A stretch of 64,000 nucleotides of DNA from Dimorphilus gyrociliatus (lineage: Eukaryota; Animalia; Annelida): positions 310,001-374,000 of the forward strand of contig CAJFCJ010000031.1 of assembly GCA_904063045.1 (NCBI GenBank), given 5' to 3'. Position 1 is the stretch's first letter, and every line of letters begins with the position of its first letter. Below the pieces are notes generated by a model, which was not told the DNA's origin, did not search any database, and worked only from the letters and a program-made list of their open reading frames with translations. The position numbers were made by a program, and so were the translations under genes. Positions 9,990-35,395 of the stretch are shown here, in pieces.

Positions 9990-11261
9990 ATGTTGTCACG
10001 TTTCGTATCAGCCAGAAGTTTCCAAGCTTTGTCTGTCTTGGGTCGATCATTCTCGACAACCCAGCAGGTTTATTTGACTTCACTTTTTAGATCAGATGTA
10101 CATAACGTGAATCGGAATAATTAATCTAACCGGGATGTTTTTACACAGGACAGTAACAAAGTGGTGATCCTGGGAGCAAGTGGAGGTATCGGACAGCCAT
10201 TGTCACTTTTAATGAAAGAAAATAAAAGAGTTTCTCACCTCGCTCTTTATGATATTGCCCATACCAAAGGTGTTGCCGCTGACCTTAGTCATATCGCTAC
10301 CCCAGCAAAAGTTACGGGCCATACAGGCCCTGAAGAACTTTCCGCATGTTTACAGGGAGCTGATGTTGTTGTTATTCCTGCTGGCGTACCAAGAAAACCA
10401 GGTAAATAGTTGGACATTTTAACAAAAGGTTATAATAAAACTTCCTTATTGTAGGCATGACTCGTGATGATTTGTTTAATACCAATGCTTCAATCGTCAG
10501 AGATCTGAGTGAAGCTTGCGCAAGAAATTGTCCGGAAGCTGTTCTTTGCATAATTTCGAACCCTGTTAGTTCTTTTTTTTATATTTCATTGAGATTTATT
10601 AAAGATTCAACTTCCTAGGTTAATTCAACCGTTCCTATAGCAAGCGAGGTTTTTAAGAAGGCCGGGGTTCACAACCCTGATAAGATATTTGGTGTGACAA
10701 CTCTTGATGTAGTCAGAGCAAATACTTTTATTGCAGAGGCTAAGAATTTAGATGTCAGCCAAGTTAATGTTCCAGTTGTTGGAGGACACTCTGGAGTAAC
10801 TATTATTCCTTTGGTTTCACAAGCAACCCCAGCTATCTCCTTCCCTTATGTGAGTTAACAATAGTATCTGGTTAACAGTTCAACTTATTGATATTTTATG
10901 TGTCTAGGCGGATCGAGGTCGTATTAGCGAACGCATTCAAAACGCTGGCACAGAGGTTGTTGAGGCAAAGGCTGGCACCGGCTCTGCCACTTTATCTATG
11001 GCATATGCAGGGGCTAAATTTGTTAACTCTATGTTAGGTGCATTAAACGGACAACAAGGTATCGTTGAGTGTGCCTACGTTAAATCTGATGAAACCGAAG
11101 CATCATACTTTGCTACACCTCTACTACTGGGCAAAAAAGGCTTAGAGAAAAATTTGGGATTGGGAAAATTATTGGAATTTGAAGTTGAGCTACTAAAAAA
11201 GGCAATGCCAGAACTTAAAGCTAACATCAAGAAGGGTGAAGACTTTGTTAATGGAAATTAA
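9990..11261 (+). CDS. MDH2: Mitochondrial malate dehydrogenase, 5 exons
   Basis: Exons 9990-10067, 10149-10401, 10455-10564, 10619-10849, 10908-11261. Transit peptide [11 protein letters not shown]; motifs [54 protein letters not shown] and [11 protein letters not shown]. Confidence 0.97.
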
Positions 11262-28308: not shown

Positions 28309-31194
28309 TTACTGCTGAGCATGGTAACTGCTGGCCATGGCTGAATAATTCTGCATCTGATAAGGTACCATAGTATTCAGAGTTTGGGAGGCCGCGTTAG
28401 GTCCAGCCGCATTAGGGAGTTGTATATTTACAGCAGGTGGCGCGGCCGCAGCAGCTGCAGCGGCGGGGTAATGCACATAGAGATGCGGCGCCTGCGGTGT
28501 GGACGTTGGGTAAGTATAATGAGGCGGAGATGCTTGAGCACAAGTAACAGTCGTTCCGTATGGTAACATGACAACGTTGGGATGTTGAATTGATTGACTT
28601 GGTGGCAGTAGAGTACTCTGATGCTGATGAGGAGCCATATGGGCGGGAGGCATCGGTACAACATTGGTTGGGTTGTTTTGCCATTGCGTATAGTACTGAG
28701 CATTCTGATGCATTTGTACAATCGGTGGTCCTGTTAAAGAACCAGGCAAAGAATCAGTGTTGCTTACTACAGCTGCAGCAGTAGGAGTCTGTTGAACGGA
28801 TACATTTGGTTGTGCCGTTGGAGGCCGTAAGTTGTTTGCATTGGGTGTTGCTCCATTTCCTTGAATGGACACGGTAGCTATGATGAAATAAACGAAAAAA
28901 GGATTTATAAAAGGGATTAGATAAGCAGTTCTTTTGTTTAACTCTTGTCAAGCTTAGTTAGTGAAAAGTTGGCGGTTAAGTCTGCGAAGAGAAATATAAA
29001 TAAAAGCTGCTTTACAATAAATTATTATTAACATAACATTGTTTCTTCAACTTTGCTAAGCCAAGGATTATTAAAAAAAAAACTCAAATTCCTAACCCTC
29101 GCTCAGAGACAATAAGGATAGAATAGCTCTTGAACGCATTATTAAAGGAATATAAGAGTGGTTAAATTCCTTTTTCCTAGCTTCAGTTTTAAGTAAAAAC
29201 AGCGAAACATGAGGTGATAGAAAAAAAATTGATTAGAAAATAAATTTACCTCTTTTCGGTTGGTTTTGTTGAGGATACCGGTTTTGAACTTGATGAGGGG
29301 TTTGTGCCGTGATTGGTTGAAACGGCTGCATTACTGGCGCATGAGCGTAAACTGGTGAAGTTTGAGAGAAATGTTGAGGCATAATAATTTGTTGTTGCCT
29401 CTGAGCTTGATGAGGAGGAGGAGGAGGAGGTTGCTGTTGTTGAACGTAAGTGTTCTGATGAGCAGTATTAACCGTCGTTGCGGCCGAACCTCTTGGAACA
29501 AAATCTTTCGCATTAGGATTCAGCTTAAAAGTTTGGACGGTCCTTTAAGAATATAATCAAAATGATTTATGGCAATTAGTAAATTATTTATAATAATACA
29601 AACGTTTGTTTCGTAGCACCAGTGGAAGACGTAGAAGTTGTAGAGGTAGTAGCACCGTTTGTTGGAGAAGGTGACTTTGAAGGTTTTGTGTTGCTGCTGC
29701 GCTCTTCGCTTTCCTTAGATAAATGGGGTATATTGAGTTTGTCTTGGAAAATCTTAAGATCCTTTATTGTGTCCTCCTTCGACGCTGGTGCTGAACGTTT
29801 GGTATCCTTTCGCTTCTCTTCAACTGTCTTATTATTTGTCGCTTTCAGAGGTGGCTCCTCTGTTGAAGCTCTTTCGGGAGTCGAAGTCGGCTTTTCTTCT
29901 CCACTTGTGCTTCCTTTCGCTTTTTTCGAAGTATTTGAACTCTCTGCAAGAAATCACGTGGTTTTATAATATTACAAAAAAAAACATTTTTTAAAAAAAA
30001 ATACTTACGTCTGCGATGAGGCGGAAGATATCTATCTGGTTGAGGACGATGAACAGCACTATATTTGGCTTCCTCTTCACCATCGTCGTCGTCGGCGGCA
30101 CTTTTACCATTAATGTCGCTTTGTTTCGTATTTTCAATTTCTTTCGCAATTTTTTCGGCTTTAGCCTGAAGTTCCAGACCTTCCTCGCTTTCGTCTTTTA
30201 CAAGTTCCGTTGTATAAGCTAACATAGACGGGTCGAAAGTCGAACCAACATTAAACAATTTACTATTCGTCTGGAACATATCGTCGGGGTTCCATCCAGT
30301 GCTTTTAGTATTTTCTAATGTCATATCATCTCCTATTTCCTCCTCTCCATCAAAATAGTCGACAAATTGACGTTCTTCAGTTTGTCCATTATAGGACTGA
30401 TGTATTTCTTGGTCAGTTTGGAAACTCTCCACCATTAGAGGACGAATTTCATTTTTCTGTTCCAAGTCATTATCTATAGCCTCCAAAGATATAACGTCTT
30501 TACGAGCGAATATTATTTCGGAGCTAATGCGATTACTATGAACACCATAACTGCCACAAGGTTTAGACTCTTCATCCTGATCCAGTCTATGTGGGACTTT
30601 CAGGACAACTTTACCCTCAGGTGAGAGAGTCTCCAAAACGCCTTCGTATATGCAGTTATCACTTGTATAGGCACGAACAAAGCGACCCAAAAGGGTTCCC
30701 AGCACTTTAGACACGTCGGAAGAAGCGTATATTCCTTCCGCCACGCTCGCCATTTCTTCTCGTTCTTCGCTGCTAAAGTCACCGTCCCTTTCTGTGTTAT
30801 TTCTGTTTTTAAACATCTCTTCCTCAAGTTGTTTGGAGTCTTTAGCGTCCTCAGCTCGAGGCATAGGTAGAAGAGCGTTAGGACTGCAATAAGAATACCA
30901 ATCTATAATATCCATCGTTTAGAATTGTGAAGCACGTGCTTTACAAGCGGATATGCAATGCACGTTGTTCTTTGAGTATGTTTATTACACCGGCATATAG
31001 TACTCAAATTAATTAAAAGTGTTTTTGAAATTTTGAATTAAATCTCGCAGATCTAACATATTTTCAATCACATAAATGTTCAATAAAATTAAGAATGGTA
31101 AAAAATTTTATAATAAGTAAGATTACCTAACATAGGTAGATGCTAGCGGTAATTTCTTCTTTCCTTTAGTGGTGCATGAGGTTGGCGAGGCCAT
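28309..31194 (-). CDS. ATXN2: Ataxin-2 homolog (Lsm, LsmAD, PAM2, Q/P-rich tail), ~5 exons
   Basis: Lsm domain EGIYASSDV..VLGTLLG...IYEGVLETLSP, LsmAD GWNPDDMFQTN..F.V.STFD...AEKIAKEIE...EEAKYSAVHR, and PAM2 motif KLNPNAKDFVP at ~29500-29530. Exon 1 (from ATG 31194) joins in phase 2 to the 29845-30915 ORF frame. Confidence 0.9.
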
Positions 31195-31976
31195 TGTTTT
31201 GTAAAACTCTTCCTAGATATGGCTTAAGCTGCAATCGCAACAACAAGCAAGCTTAATTTAAAGAAATTCTTAATCATTTAATTTAAAGCTAGAGTCTTAC
31301 CCTGATTTAAGTTTCATAAAACCGAAATATGTTTGAAAAACCGCTAACGATCAAGAAAGTAGCGACCAGTTAAAGATGTCGGCCAGCATATTGTATTAAT
31401 GCGCGGTGTTAACGTATGTTCTAAAAAATAAAGTCTATTTTCGTTTATAAGTCTTGTATAAATTTTAAACATTTTTTTTTTTGGTAAGGTTAATTTTAAA
31501 AATAGCAATAGCAAATAGTTACGAACTATATTCTTAAATTTCTATTTATCAATCAATACCAGATGACTCTTACGAATAAACTCGTCCGGTACATTTTCGG
31601 AACTCTGGACTCGTCCATCTATTCCTATACCGGTCAGCTATTGAATTACCAAACCGATTTTTCCTGTAGCCAATCAAAATCGATTTAAAGCATGGAAAAT
31701 TCATAAGAAGTCGACGGTGATTGGACCACTCCTAGAGCCGGTGTTGTCATGTCGTCCAATATACAATATACAGTAATGTATTAGAGGAATATTGGTATTG
31801 TATAAAATTTAGCTCAAGTTAATTATTACTCTTTAATTGAATTCTCAACCAGTGATCTTCAATATTTGTAAGTAAATTAATCTTTCTCTATTAAAATAGA
31901 TCTTTAAATAAACAAAATTTTAATGATTTTCTTCGAAAACTTTATATACATGATCAGCTTAAAATATCTACACGAG
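31195..31976. promoter_or_regulatory. Divergent promoter region (ATXN2 <- / -> ELOVL4-like)
   Basis: Start codons are head-to-head, 782 bp apart, with locally GC-richer blocks. Confidence 0.45.
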
Positions 31977-33746
31977 ATGGAGTTAATCACCGATAAAATA
32001 AATCAAATTCAAAAATTTTACGAATGGAGTCTCTTAAGAGCAGGTATGATCATATAGTAGTCAATAATTTACAAATATTACGCTAGCGTAGGGACTCACA
32101 TTCCAACACCCTTAAAAATGGGCTTGTCTCAACAGATAAAAGAGTGGAAAACTGGCTTTTTATGGAAGGTTACACACCCACGCTACTTCTTACATTATCA
32201 TACTTACTGATTGTTCAAGTCGGTCCAAAGATAATGAAGAATAGAGAAGCCTTTCAATTACGTGGTATCCTGATAATCTACAATGCTTTCTTAGTCCTTG
32301 TCAATTTGCATATTTGTACGGAATTATTTATTGCCAGCACTAAACTGGGTTATAGTTACGTTTGTCAGCCAGTAAATTATAGTTCAAACCCAGATGAGAT
32401 GAGAATTGCTAAGGCTTTATGGTGGTTCTATTTCTCAAAATGTCTTGAATTTGGTGACACTTTTTTATTCATTCTTCGAAAAAAGAACAATCAAATATCC
32501 TTTCTACATGTTTACCACCACGCCACCATGTTTCCCATCTGGTGGATTGGTGTTAAGTGGGTTGCTGGTGGTCAATGTTAGTTAATAAATAACTAATTAT
32601 ATTTTTATATTTGTAATTACTTGAATGTTTATTTTTTTAAAACAGCATTCTTCGGAGCAATGGTCAACTCGTTTATACATGTTATAATGTACTCCTACTA
32701 TGGTTTTGCTGCTTTAGGACCTCAATATCAAAAGTACTTGTGGTGGAAGCGTTATCTGACAAGAATTCAATTGGTGAGTTCAAACTGAGATTTATCATTT
32801 TTTCATCATTCTAGAATGATTTTGAAGAGGAAGAACAAAAACCGTTTTTTTTGCTGGTTTTGCTTATGTGCGTTGTTTTAGTTTATCAAATAGAAACAAA
32901 GGAGGGAAAATAGAAGGAGAAAATAGAGGAACGATAATAAAATGTTCATTTTCTTCCATTCTTCGCCATATATTAGTCATAATTTTTTATTCTTTTTAGA
33001 AAAATCTATTATACTTTTTTGATAGTATGAAAGACAATAAGAATAGATATTTTTAACTATAGTAAAATAAAAAGTCTAGTAGTAAGTAGAAATAATAGAT
33101 AATATAATGTTTTTTTTTCTGCCTTTTTTTTTTTAAAAAACAAATTGTTTTGGTTTTATAGTGAAAAAAGAACTCTTTTAAAAAAGCATACACTTATTAA
33201 TTAATTAAAAAAAATTAGATGCAATTTTTTGGTGGATTGGTCTACGGTTCGCAAAGTTTATACTTTGAATGCGATTTTCCCCGTTGGATCCAATGGATTT
33301 CTGTGGCTTATGGTGTGACCATAACCATACTGTTCCTGAATTTTTATTATCACGCATATATTAAAACAAGCGATAAACGGTTAAAGGTAATTTAGATGTT
33401 TTTTTGACAAATATTTGTTATGTTTGTTTAGGTTCAATTTGTTGTTGGAATGGCGCATGCTGCGCAATCATTACTTTTCGGTTGCGATTTCCCAACCTGG
33501 ATGCATTGGGCTTTAATTTTCTACGGCCTATCAATCCTTCTTTTGTTCTTAAACTTCTATTTTCACGCATACGTGAAATCCAAAGGAAAGAAGGTATAGT
33601 GTTGTATTATTCATAGAATAAAAGTATTTTTTATCATTATTGTTAGACATTTTGAATGATGATGACTAGACAAGAATGTATTCAATTTAACTTCTTTTCA
33701 GGTTAAAAGCAACGGAGAACACAAAAAGAATGGAAAATCTGACTAA
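31977..33746 (+). CDS. ELOVL4: Very-long-chain fatty acid elongase, ELOVL4-like, with two alternative versions of exon 4
   Basis: Motifs [22 protein letters not shown], histidine box [24 protein letters not shown] and WWKRYLT. Exon 4a is 33219-33386 and exon 4b is 33432-33593; 4b ([14 protein letters not shown]...LFLNFY) closely resembles vertebrate ELOVL4. The last exon 33702-33746 has a Lys-rich ER-retention-like end. Confidence 0.92.
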
Positions 33747-34351
33747 AGCATTGTTTTCACGTGTTAGAGTATTTTTCAAAAATAGATGTTATTTTACACT
33801 TTAATACAGAATAAAATTGAAATAGTAAAATAAGATACTTTGTCCAATTTTTCAAAACCGGAACTTAATTAATTTAAATTTCGCGCCCCACCATTCGTAA
33901 ACGGTGATTCATAAACCGGTCAGAGGGATTTCCAAGGCACTCCCGGAACCGCACATTGCATTTTCTATTATAGTTAAATTTATGATTTTAAATATATTTC
34001 TTTTATTGATACCATGATCTTTTTTAAACGATTGATGATGGAGAGAAAAAAGTAAACAACAACATATATATAAATATAAATAGAATACGGTCAGTATCAA
34101 CAGATGTTACTAAGCTGTATGCTTTTCTTGTTTCCTTTTCGTAATTTTCTAACAATAATAATCTTAGCTGATATAAAGAAAGTTATATCTTTTTATGATT
34201 ATATTAAAAAAAGGAATTTTTATTTTATATATTATATAAGTTATTTTTAAAAGAACAGAACATTAAATAAATATGTTGCCTAAGTATCGACATTTTCAAT
34301 CTCTTTTTTACCAATAGGTTCGAGCTAATATGAACAAAAGCGCTTAGAAAC

Positions 34352-35395
34352 ATGACATATTTGGCCTATATTATCCATCTTGTTAAGAGAATTTTGAAAG
34401 CTCCAAAAATCGCAGCACTTGTGACTGTTCTATTCTTTTTAGCAGAAAATGTAACTGAATTAGCTATTAGATATGTACCGGAATTCAATCGTCTAAAACA
34501 GGGAATTCATAATTGTGACAGGCTACCAAAGATAGATACATATGGAATAATGTGCCCTTTTGATAAACCGAGCTTATATGCTACCAATGATGTTATTATT
34601 TTAACATATGCCAATTCTGGATGGTCGTCTCAAGTAACCAACTGGATTTGTAACGCTAAAAAAGCGAAATTATCTAATTTATTAGTTGTAGCTGTTAACG
34701 AAGACTTATGTAAAAGCTTAGGATCGATTGAAGGCGTAAAATGTTGGACACCTTCACTCTCACCAGCATTTCAGCATTTGAAAGACAAAACTATGCAACA
34801 ATCAAGATTTAACGCAAGTGGGAAAGCCCAATGGGGAACTCAAAAATATGGATTACTGTTAAAATATCGGACTTTAGTCATATATTCTCTACTCAAATGT
34901 GGACATCCGCTTCTACTATCTGATACGGATGTTATTTTTCTAAAGTCTCCCTTAAATTATTTAAGGCAGCTTGCTTATGGGAATGGTTCAAATATAGATA
35001 CTCTCAATCCTAAAAACGAAATGATCTTCCAGAAAGACGCAACCGGTTGGAGAAGATTCGACAGTTGGGGCCTAAGAGGTTGGCTTGGTAATTGGTATGC
35101 TTGTGCCGGTTTTGCATACATCATACCTACTCCTGCCATAATAAAATTTTGGGAGGGAATGCTAGCCTTCCAAGAATTTGATTGGAATGATCAAGTCGGT
35201 GTTAATTTATGCTTGAGATATTCTAACCACAGAGTTCGTTGGACGACACTGGACTCGCAAATATTTCCAAATGGTAGAATGGTGCAGGATGGATACGAAA
35301 TGAATCAAGATCCTTTTGTTATTCATTTTAATTGGATTCACGACTTTAACGATAAAATTAAGTATATGAAATTAAGGAAACTTTGGTGTGGATAA
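34352..35395 (+). CDS. Nucleotide-diphospho-sugar transferase (GT77/PF03407-like), intronless CDS, 347 aa
   Basis: N-terminal TM anchor (IAALVTVLFFLA), ILTYAN..W...NWICN, LLVVAVNEDLC, DxD motif LLSDTDVIFLKSP, CAGFAYI, NDQVGVN, L...IFPNG and VIHFNW...KIK.MK...LW. Confidence 0.82.
   Translation: MTYLAYIIHLVKRILKAPKIAALVTVLFFLAENVTELAIRYVPEFNRLKQGIHNCDRLPKIDTYGIMCPFDKPSLYATNDVIILTYANSGWSSQVTNWICNAKKAKLSNLLVVAVNEDLCKSLGSIEGVKCWTPSLSPAFQHLKDKTMQQSRFNASGKAQWGTQKYGLLLKYRTLVIYSLLKCGHPLLLSDTDVIFLKSPLNYLRQLAYGNGSNIDTLNPKNEMIFQKDATGWRRFDSWGLRGWLGNWYACAGFAYIIPTPAIIKFWEGMLAFQEFDWNDQVGVNLCLRYSNHRVRWTTLDSQIFPNGRMVQDGYEMNQDPFVIHFNWIHDFNDKIKYMKLRKLWCG

What the first reader, a model, noticed from the sequence alone, without database searches (positions are those of the whole stretch)
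33219..33593. Tandem duplicated, probably mutually exclusive exon pair swapping the last TM helices of a fatty-acid elongase
Seen: after exon 3 come two homologous phase-0/phase-0 exons. 4a (33219-33386) encodes [56 protein letters not shown]. 4b (33432-33593) encodes [54 protein letters not shown]. Both keep Q, C-x-FP, W, Y and LFLNFY, but are otherwise diverged with no stops, which suggests both are under selection. The intron between them is only 45 nt, whereas the shortest other introns I reconstructed here are 53-54 nt. Including both exons would be in frame and would duplicate helices. Established: very short separating introns are a known steric mechanism of mutual exclusion, and residues in the TM6-7 region tune chain length or substrate in elongases (yeast Elo/Sur4 'caliper' lysine; Cys versus Trp in rat Elovl2/Elovl5). 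The aligned position is Met in 4b (as in ELOVL4) and Ile in 4a. Inference: one compact locus yields two elongases with different specificities, standing in for a gene duplication. Caveat: 4a has a weak, A-rich acceptor.
Basis: partly seen in the sequence, partly recalled or inferred. Interest (0 to 1): 0.75.

Follow-up and report, generated by a model that had tools for sequence, protein, structure and literature searches.

The report
Swappable exon pair in worm elongase
An ELOVL4-type fatty-acid elongase gene of the tiny marine worm Dimorphilus gyrociliatus has two old, selected, alternative versions of the exon for its last two membrane helices; oysters, lamp shells and ribbon worms have the same pair, so one gene very probably makes two enzymes with differently shaped fatty-acid pockets.

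Summary
Exons 4a (33219-33386) and 4b (33432-33593) are homologous (50% aa), both phase 0/0, 45 nt apart, and both match the same part of Pfam ELO. 4a is not a decaying copy. In a related dinophilid genome it is intact, 82% identical and under purifying selection (dN/dS 0.14-0.20, p=2e-5), while flanking introns are unalignable. The pair is ancient: the same a-then-b arrangement, with a 44-69 nt intron, occurs in oyster, pearl oyster, Lingula and the ribbon worm Tubulanus, and a-type exons form one clade. Oyster isoforms share identical flanks and carry either a or b, which is true mutual exclusion. A relative's mRNA uses 4b and skips 4a. I found no RNA containing 4a for this worm, so either-or use here is inferred. 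Both versions keep the catalytic Gln and the disulfide Cys. They differ at a residue that lines the acyl pocket (Leu in b, Ser/Gly/Ala in a) and at a TM6 His/Tyr. This is a new member of a known kind, and I found no paper describing it. The scan holds 35 other such exon-pair notes for this genome, none on this gene elsewhere.

The parts
31977..32043 (+). Exon 1 (start codon to phase-1 donor)
   Evidence: Read from the sequence. Matches the N-terminus of the relative's transcript protein P0001 and L007:5809-5874.
32136..32576 (+). Exon 2: TM1-TM5 part with the HxxHH box ([10 protein letters not shown]) and the Cys partner of the loop disulfide
   Evidence: Translation. 93% identical to P0001 and 89% to L007. 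dN/dS 0.04-0.06.
32646..32773 (+). Exon 3, ends in phase 0 with ...YLTRIQL (holds the Q211 equivalent)
   Evidence: The donor GTGAGT is conserved in L007.
32774..33218 (+). Intron 3 (445 nt) before exon 4a; A-rich, weak acceptor region for 4a
   Evidence: Only 46% identical to L007, i.e. essentially unconstrained. The TTAG|ATGCAA acceptor is conserved.
33219..33386 (+). Exon 4a (a-type TM6-loop-TM7 module, 56 codons, phase 0/0)
   Evidence: The orthologue L007:7141-7308 is intact and 82% aa identical. dN/dS 0.14-0.20, Fisher p=1.9e-5. Falls in the a-type clade with mollusc, brachiopod and nemertean exons.
33387..33431 (+). 45-nt intron between 4a and 4b. It holds the 4a donor (GTAATT), an in-frame stop two codons in, and the pyrimidine tract and acceptor of 4b
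   Evidence: 80% identical to the 43-nt counterpart in L007, against 41-46% for the other introns. It is the shortest strongly motif-supported intron among those inferred in 264 kb.
33432..33593 (+). Exon 4b (b-type, canonical ELOVL4-like TM6-loop-TM7 module, 54 codons, phase 0/0)
   Evidence: 94% aa identical in L007 and present in the relative's mRNA P0001/L006. dN/dS 0.09-0.14.
33594..33701 (+). Intron (108 nt) between 4b and exon 5
   Evidence: 41% identical to L007.
33702..33746 (+). Exon 5: 14 C-terminal residues plus the stop codon
   Evidence: The counterpart is spliced to 4b in P0001 and found at L007:7669-7716.

Best explanation
This is the D. gyrociliatus copy of an ancient lophotrochozoan pair of mutually exclusive exons in an ELOVL4-type 3-ketoacyl-CoA synthase. 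Exon 3 is spliced either to 4b or to 4a. 4b has a strong acceptor, the canonical ELOVL4-like sequence, and is the default. 4a has a weak, A-rich acceptor and is presumably a regulated minor form. Each exon encodes a complete TM6, TM6/7 loop and TM7 module. Both lengths are multiples of three, so double inclusion would stay in frame and escape nonsense-mediated decay. It is probably prevented because the 45-nt intron is too short: the 4a donor and the branch site and acceptor of 4b crowd each other. The two products share the catalytic core, but TM6 and TM7 differ at tunnel positions. Most notably, the residue aligned with acyl-pocket residue I242 of human ELOVL7 is Leu in b-type and Ser/Gly/Ala in a-type. 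TM6 has His in b-type (H221 equivalent) and Tyr in a-type. So the gene likely yields two elongases with different acyl-chain preferences. Shown: homology, selection, orthology of the pair across phyla, either-or use in oyster, and 4b use in a close relative. Inferred: 4a use and exclusivity in this worm, the steric mechanism, and the specificity difference.
For: Both exons are real ELO modules. Purifying selection on 4a: in the genomic contig of a relative (L007) it has the same length, no stop or indel, and 82% aa identity. Differences by codon position are 7/4/15, pN 0.086 versus pS 0.43, Fisher p=1.9e-5. The flanking introns are 41-46% identical, while the 45-nt intron is 80% identical and 43 nt long. 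The a-then-b pair occurs in Magallana gigas (44-nt intron), Pinctada (59), Lingula (59) and Tubulanus (69). The a-type exons of all these taxa, plus 4a, form one clade (88/87); the b-types sit with single-exon ELOVL4s of an echinoderm, an acoel and a bryozoan. Oyster isoform X1 (P0277, also seen in many RNA-derived Logan contigs) and P0108 are identical before and after the exon but carry a or b respectively. The 298 versus 295 aa of X1/X2 listed in PMC4550275 fits 57 versus 54 codons. Tubulanus RefSeq X1/X2 diverge exactly at the exon 3 end into b or a. The relative's mRNA joins E3-4b-E5 and skips 4a. A dinophilid-specific paralogue has E2+E3+a-type fused in one exon, with no b and no 3' introns, as expected if it was copied from a spliced a-only message. 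Both versions keep Q214, C231, F253 and other invariant positions. Disjoint a/b columns fall at the equivalents of H221, I242, F247, L250 and L251. In C. elegans, 3n-length exclusive exons typically rely on introns below the species minimum (PMC4165533).
Against: No transcript or protein containing 4a from D. gyrociliatus or its relatives turned up. The searches were a word search for 31-98 aa fragments, a tail-restricted search of 142-453 aa proteins and a full HMMER scan (best hit 62% identity). The 4a acceptor lacks a pyrimidine tract. 45 nt is only just under the 47-48 nt introns that look real in my rough 264-kb survey, and the species splices short introns efficiently (median 66 nt, PMC7854359), so steric exclusion is not secure. 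In Pinctada, Lingula and Tubulanus the intron is 59-69 nt. The I242 mapping rests on one phmmer alignment with a nearby indel. Capitella has lost the a exon, so it is dispensable in some annelids.
Confidence: 0.72

Rival explanations
1. The a-type enzyme is made without strict exon swapping. 4a is spliced in and its donor is not used. The 45-nt intron is retained, and translation stops two codons into it (...KRLK-V-I-stop), with 4b and exon 5 becoming 3' UTR.
For: An in-frame stop follows the 4a donor in both dinophilids (GTA ATT TAG versus GTA ATC TAA). The two substitutions there are silent in that frame. RefSeq isoform X2 of Tubulanus is exactly such a model: a exon plus the retained 69-nt intron read to a stop at its end. 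The Pinctada model P0123 also reads through. If the intron is too short to splice, this outcome is expected whenever the 4a donor fails to pair with the exon 5 acceptor.
Against: Oyster mRNAs splice a directly to the last exon. The 4a donor AAG|GTAAT is well formed and conserved. AT-rich introns hold stops by chance, and only two substitutions are informative. Such an mRNA would carry a premature stop upstream of a junction.
Confidence: 0.18
2. 4a is an unused relic in this worm. Its role was taken over by the a-type-only paralogue on contig C2, and only 4b is ever expressed.
For: Only the 4b isoform was found in a relative's transcriptome. The 4a acceptor is weak. 4a evolves faster than 4b (82% versus 94% aa identity, dN/dS 0.14-0.20 versus 0.09-0.14). 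Capitella lost the a exon. An a-only paralogue exists.
Against: The paralogue predates the split of the two dinophilids and is present in the same sample as L007. Even so, 4a has since kept its frame, length, splice sites and a strong excess of synonymous change, while neighbouring introns diverged beyond alignment.
Confidence: 0.07
3. Both exons are normally included together, giving a nine-helix protein with a duplicated TM6-TM7 module.
For: Double inclusion is in frame and would keep the topology of the C-terminus. The 45-nt intron has good GT and AG signals and is only slightly shorter than other introns of this genome.
Against: The relative's full-length mRNA has 4b only. Oyster and Tubulanus isoforms carry one or the other. 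No protein of 142-453 aa carrying the dinophilid 4a, which would include a two-exon product, was found. The six-helix barrel of ELOVL7 leaves no place for two extra helices.
Confidence: 0.03

Closest known systems
Magallana (Crassostrea) gigas ELOVL4 isoforms X1 (XP_011450775, 298 aa) and X2 (XP_011450777, 295 aa)
   Same: Orthologous tandem a-type and b-type exons in the same order and phase, with a 44-nt intron between them. Transcripts carry one or the other between identical flanks.
   Different: The oyster exons are spliced to a longer C-terminal exon, and RNA evidence exists for both forms. The literature lists the two only as separate sequences in a table and tree, not as an exon switch (PMC4550275).
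Tubulanus polymorphus ELOVL4-like isoforms X1/X2 (XP_074661921/XP_074661922)
   Same: The same a-then-b exon pair, and the two isoforms diverge exactly at the end of the preceding exon.
   Different: The intron is 69 nt. The a isoform is modelled with that intron retained and read to a stop, not spliced to the last exon.
Sterically enforced mutually exclusive exons (alpha-tropomyosin exons 2/3; C. elegans let-2 exons 9/10 and egl-15 exons 5A/5B)
   Same: Homologous tandem exons whose lengths are multiples of three, separated by an intron at or below the species' minimal size, so nonsense-mediated decay cannot police double inclusion (PMC4165533).
   Different: In C. elegans the gaps (14-30 nt) are far below the ~40 nt minimum. 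Here 45 nt is only marginally below the shortest inferred introns of 47-48 nt, so the mechanism is less certain.
Human ELOVL7 structure (PDB 6Y7F)
   Same: The swapped exon corresponds to residues 213-264. These cover the catalytic-pocket Gln214, the loop Cys231 (disulfide) and the TM7 acyl-pocket residues F238 and I242.
   Different: ELOVL7 belongs to another subfamily and has a 3-residue longer loop. No alternative exon is known for it.
Elovl2/Elovl5 chain-length determinant (Cys versus Trp, W231C in lamprey Elovl2)
   Same: Shows that one residue in this part of an elongase can add C22-to-C24 capacity (PMC4746653). This supports the idea that swapping the module changes specificity.
   Different: That case is a fixed difference between paralogous genes, not a splice choice. 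I did not align that residue to the a/b diagnostic positions.

Membership tests
ELO / GNS1-SUR4 elongases (Pfam PF01151), ELOVL4-like | Significant match to the ELO profile | tested here: met
   4a scores 34.3 bits and 4b 39.7 bits (cut-off 27) on profile positions 183-241. All top homologues of exon 2 carry PF01151 and are mostly named ELOVL4.
ELO / GNS1-SUR4 elongases (Pfam PF01151), ELOVL4-like | Histidine box HxxHH on TM4 | tested here: met
   HVYHH is present in the exon 2 translation. The motif is described in bioRxiv 10.1101/2020.11.11.378570.
ELO / GNS1-SUR4 elongases (Pfam PF01151), ELOVL4-like | Catalytic-pocket glutamines (Q211, Q214) and the loop cysteine (C231) with its partner | tested here: met
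   Exon 3 ends ...IQL. Both 4a and 4b begin xQF and keep the Cys at position 18. These positions are invariant in 13 a-type and 12 b-type exons. The partner Cys is in exon 2 (YSYVCQP).
ELO / GNS1-SUR4 elongases (Pfam PF01151), ELOVL4-like | Condensing activity with acyl-CoA and malonyl-CoA | not testable with these tools
   Needs expression and fatty-acid analysis.
Mutually exclusive exon pair | Tandem homologous exons of the same phase and nearly the same length, each with its own splice sites | tested here: met
   168 and 162 nt, phase 0/0, 50% aa identity, AG and GT present and conserved in L007.
Mutually exclusive exon pair | Both copies under purifying selection | tested here: met
   dN/dS is 0.14-0.20 for 4a and 0.09-0.14 for 4b against L007, with Fisher p about 1e-5 for each. 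The a and b clades span four phyla.
Mutually exclusive exon pair | Mature mRNAs contain exactly one of the two | tested here: inconclusive
   Met for the orthologous oyster pair. 4b-only mRNA is seen in a close relative. No 4a-containing message was found for dinophilids.
Mutually exclusive exon pair | A mechanism that blocks double inclusion (here: an intron too short to splice) | tested here: inconclusive
   The intron is 45 nt here, 43 nt in the relative and 44 nt in oyster, but 59-69 nt in three other taxa. The inferred lower edge of intron sizes in this genome is 47-48 nt, from a rough survey of 264 kb.

The most novel reading that the evidence does not exclude
A splice switch more than 500 million years old, kept in annelids, molluscs, brachiopods and nemerteans, toggles the size of the ELOVL4 acyl pocket (Leu versus Ser/Gly/Ala at the I242-equivalent, His versus Tyr on TM6). 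What is counted as the single invertebrate Elovl4 would then really be two enzymes with different chain-length or unsaturation ranges. In dinophilids the a-form was additionally frozen into a separate gene through a spliced message.
Probability: 0.4. Interest if true: 0.65.

Novelty: new member of a known kind. Interest (0 to 1): 0.5.

Why it matters
Marine invertebrates are studied for their ability to make long-chain and very-long-chain polyunsaturated fatty acids. Their Elovl4 is usually treated as one enzyme, and one cloned isoform is assayed. A conserved either-or exon that replaces TM6-TM7, including a pocket-lining residue, means those assays may have covered only half of the gene's output. 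It also offers a natural module-swap experiment on how ELOVL enzymes set chain length, which is still open since the ELOVL7 structure. For genome annotation, gene models in Pinctada and Tubulanus read through the short intron, and oyster isoforms have been counted as separate sequences.

Tried and rejected
- **Fragment search:** a word search with 4a alone, for RNA-derived fragments of 31-98 aa, found no candidate.
- **Tail-restricted search:** searching with the a-only paralogue P0003 (142-453 aa) gave only Pinctada and oyster, and no dinophilid 4a isoform.
- **Full HMMER scan with 4a:** 172 hits, the best only 54-62% identical and mostly genomic ORF calls of a-type exons from unnamed sources. 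None came from dinophilids.
- **P0011 locus look-up:** failed because only the longest product of a gene is on record. Solved by using P0121 instead.
- **Helobdella locus:** the 3' exons are not in the fetched stretch, which has assembly gaps, so it is uninformative.
- **Competing RNA pairing as the exclusion mechanism:** inverted repeats in 32774-33701 are AT-rich and of low complexity, and the one touching a conserved island is not conserved in L007. Rejected for lack of evidence.
- **tRNA and Rfam scan of 31000-35000:** nothing found.
- **First version of the intron survey, without motif filters:** gave a flat, useless distribution.
- **Literature searches for a described exon switch in ELOVL genes:** found none. 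One search failed on term length.
- **Joined spliced protein:** All work was exon by exon or with natural full-length proteins of relatives. For that reason no structure prediction of the two isoforms of this gene was made.
- **Human sequence:** no contig was taken for human.

Full report
**1. What is in the sequence**

The window comes from the annelid Dimorphilus gyrociliatus. That identity is taken from an earlier scan note; the assembly is 77.9 Mb in 349 contigs.

On the + strand lies a five-to-six-exon ELOVL-type elongase gene:
- E1 31977-32043
- E2 32136-32576, with the HVYHH box
- E3 32646-32773, ending ...YLTRIQL in phase 0
- 4a 33219-33386
- 4b 33432-33593
- E5 33702-33746

The two exons align without gaps at 50% identity, E=4e-23. 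Each alone passes the Pfam ELO threshold on the same profile positions, 183-241 of 242. The intron between them is 45 nt.

The 4b version of the gene model is confirmed junction by junction by P0001. This is a 281-aa protein from an RNA-derived Logan contig (L006) of a relative that is 93% identical in exon 2. It reads E3-4b-E5 and lacks 4a.

Searches were made exon by exon or with natural proteins of relatives.

**2. Is 4a alive?**

A genomic contig of a second relative (L007, 89% identical in exon 2) holds both exons:
- 4a at L007:7141-7308: 56 codons, no stop or indel, 82% aa identity.
- 4b at L007:7352-7513: 94% aa identity.
- They are 43 nt apart.

Nucleotide identity by segment:

| Segment | Identity |
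|---|---|
| E3 | 0.87 |
| Intron before 4a | 0.46 |
| 4a | 0.85 |
| Short a-b intron | 0.80 |
| 4b | 0.90 |
| Intron after 4b | 0.41 |

So 4a and the short intron stand out from neutral surroundings.

The differences in 4a fall 7/4/15 by codon position. dN/dS is 0.14-0.20, compared with 0.09-0.14 for 4b and 0.03-0.06 for E2 and E3. The excess of synonymous change has Fisher p=1.9e-5. 4a is therefore a protein-coding exon under purifying selection, though somewhat less constrained than 4b.

**3. The pair is ancient**

A search with exon 2 brought in full-length relatives. The two RefSeq isoforms of the nemertean Tubulanus polymorphus are identical up to ...YLTILQL. After that they carry either a 4b-like or a 4a-like module.

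Fetching genomic loci showed the same arrangement, a-type exon first and b-type second, in four taxa:

| Taxon | Locus | Intron between a and b |
|---|---|---|
| Tubulanus | L010 | 69 nt |
| Pinctada imbricata | L011 | 59 nt |
| Magallana gigas | L012 | 44 nt |
| Lingula anatina | L013 | 59 nt |

Capitella, the bryozoan Watersipora and the brittle star Amphiura have a single b-like exon.

In a tree of 44 exon peptides, all a-type exons form one side of a branch with support 88/87. That side includes 4a, its dinophilid orthologue, the bivalve, Lingula and Tubulanus exons, and several unnamed genomic ORFs from the full HMMER scan. The b-types group with the single-exon ELOVL4s. Fifty columns cannot resolve more than this, but 4a is clearly not a recent local duplicate of 4b.

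**4. Either-or use is shown in oyster**

Oyster isoform X1 (P0277) carries the a exon and was recovered from many RNA-derived contigs. The UniRef protein P0108 carries the b exon. The sequence before the exon (...YLTMLQL) and after it (the KHDDGS... tail) is identical in both. The exon sizes, 57 versus 54 codons, match the 298 versus 295 aa of X1 and X2 listed in PMC4550275. That paper treats them simply as two sequences.

I found no paper that describes an exon switch in any ELOVL gene.

**5. What differs between the two modules**

4b aligns to residues 213-264 of human ELOVL7 (6Y7F). According to the structure paper (bioRxiv 10.1101/2020.11.11.378570):
- Q214 helps form the malonyl pocket.
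- C231 makes the loop disulfide.
- F238 and I242 line the acyl pocket.
- F253 lines the cysteamine pocket.

Across 13 a-type and 12 b-type exons, the equivalents of Q214, C231, F253 and other core positions are invariant in both types; the F238 position is an invariant Trp in both. Five columns are disjoint:

| Exon position | ELOVL7 equivalent | a-type | b-type |
|---|---|---|---|
| 9 | H221 | Tyr | His |
| 28 | I242 | Ser/Gly/Ala | Leu |
| 33 | F247 | Val/Ala/Ile | Leu/Phe/Gly/Met/Ser |
| 36 | L250 | Ile/Thr | Leu/Phe |
| 37 | L251 | Ala/Ile/Thr | Leu/Gly/Cys/Ser/Met/Val |

A smaller residue at a pocket-lining position suggests a roomier acyl pocket in the a form. This is an inference and rests on one alignment with a nearby indel.

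A single residue in this part can change chain-length capacity, as shown by W231C in lamprey Elovl2 (PMC4746653).

**6. How exclusivity might be enforced**

Both exons are multiples of three, so double inclusion would not be cleared by nonsense-mediated decay. In C. elegans, such clusters typically have intervening introns below the species minimum (PMC4165533).

The median D. gyrociliatus intron is 66 nt, and short introns are spliced efficiently (PMC7854359).

My own rough survey covered the window plus 200 kb of contig C2. It looked for GT...AG segments whose removal joins two 50-codon open frames, filtered by splice motifs. It gives a peak at 52-69 nt and a lower edge at 47-48 nt. The few shorter candidates have poor motifs. 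Under the strict filter, the 45-nt a-b intron is the shortest of all.

The intron is thus at or just under the limit. Its shortness is conserved (43, 44 and 45 nt in three taxa), and its sequence is 80% conserved. But the margin is small, and three taxa have 59-69 nt, so steric exclusion is likely rather than shown.

An alternative route to the a-type protein is retention of this intron. An in-frame stop lies two codons into it in both dinophilids, and the Tubulanus X2 and Pinctada models are of that kind.

**7. The a-only paralogue**

Contig C2 carries a second ELOVL4-like gene (L003). It has an E1-like exon, one intron at the ancestral position, and then a single exon that fuses E2, E3 and an a-type module and ends in KKKKQ-stop. 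It has no b exon and no E5.

On exon 2 alone it groups with the window's gene inside a dinophilid clade (SH-aLRT 99). Its orthologue P0003 lies in the same sequencing sample as L007, with the same neighbours. The duplicate therefore arose in the dinophilid lineage before the two species split.

Its 3' intron loss fits copying from a spliced a-only message. That is indirect historical evidence for such a message.

It also shows two things. The exon pair does not stand in for gene duplication in this compact genome. And 4a stayed under selection despite the paralogue.

**8. Verdict**

- **Observation:** confirmed.
- **Novelty:** a new member of a known kind. The isoforms exist in RefSeq for oyster and Tubulanus, but the switch appears undescribed.
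- **Context:** the scan already holds 35 notes of tandem alternative exons in this genome, so the class is common here. This gene had been noted only at this same place.

Noticed in passing
L003:617-1662 (G000:C2:4391036-4392081, + strand): A second ELOVL4-like gene. It has an E1-like exon, one intron, then a single exon fusing E2, E3 and an a-type TM6-7 module, ending KKKKQ-stop. There is no b exon, no E5 and no 3' introns. It is a dinophilid-specific duplicate, probably made through a spliced a-only message. Another ELO gene lies next to it on the opposite strand (L005).
   Followed up: partly
window:33219-33593 versus L007:7141-7513: Synonymous divergence is lower in the two alternative exons (dS 0.3-0.6) than in constitutive exon 2 (1.1-1.7). 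This is as expected if splicing signals constrain silent sites, but the sample is small.
   Followed up: no
window:33387-33395: An in-frame stop lies two codons after the 4a donor (GTA ATT TAG). In the relative it reads GTA ATC TAA, and both changes are silent in that frame. This could be chance, or a sign that the unspliced form is translated.
   Followed up: partly
window:32830-32850: The only conserved island (15/20) in the otherwise unalignable 445-nt intron before 4a, around AACCGTTTTT. It is a candidate splicing regulatory element. No conserved pairing partner was found.
   Followed up: partly
window about 10107-10148 (+) and about 28731-28767 (-): My open-frame survey proposed 42-nt and 37-nt introns here with weak splice motifs. 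If real, they would show that introns shorter than 45 nt can be spliced in this genome.
   Followed up: no
L011:15383-15615 (Pinctada) and L010:11812-12030 (Tubulanus): The public gene models P0123 and XP_074661922 end by reading through the short a-b intron to a stop. These may be annotation artefacts of an unrecognised exon switch, or real retained-intron isoforms.
   Followed up: partly
PMC4550275, Table 4 and Elovl tree: Oyster ELOVL4 isoforms X1 and X2 were entered as two sequences (C. gigas 6 and 7) in a gene-family survey. Exon-switch isoforms can inflate apparent Elovl gene counts in molluscs.
   Followed up: no
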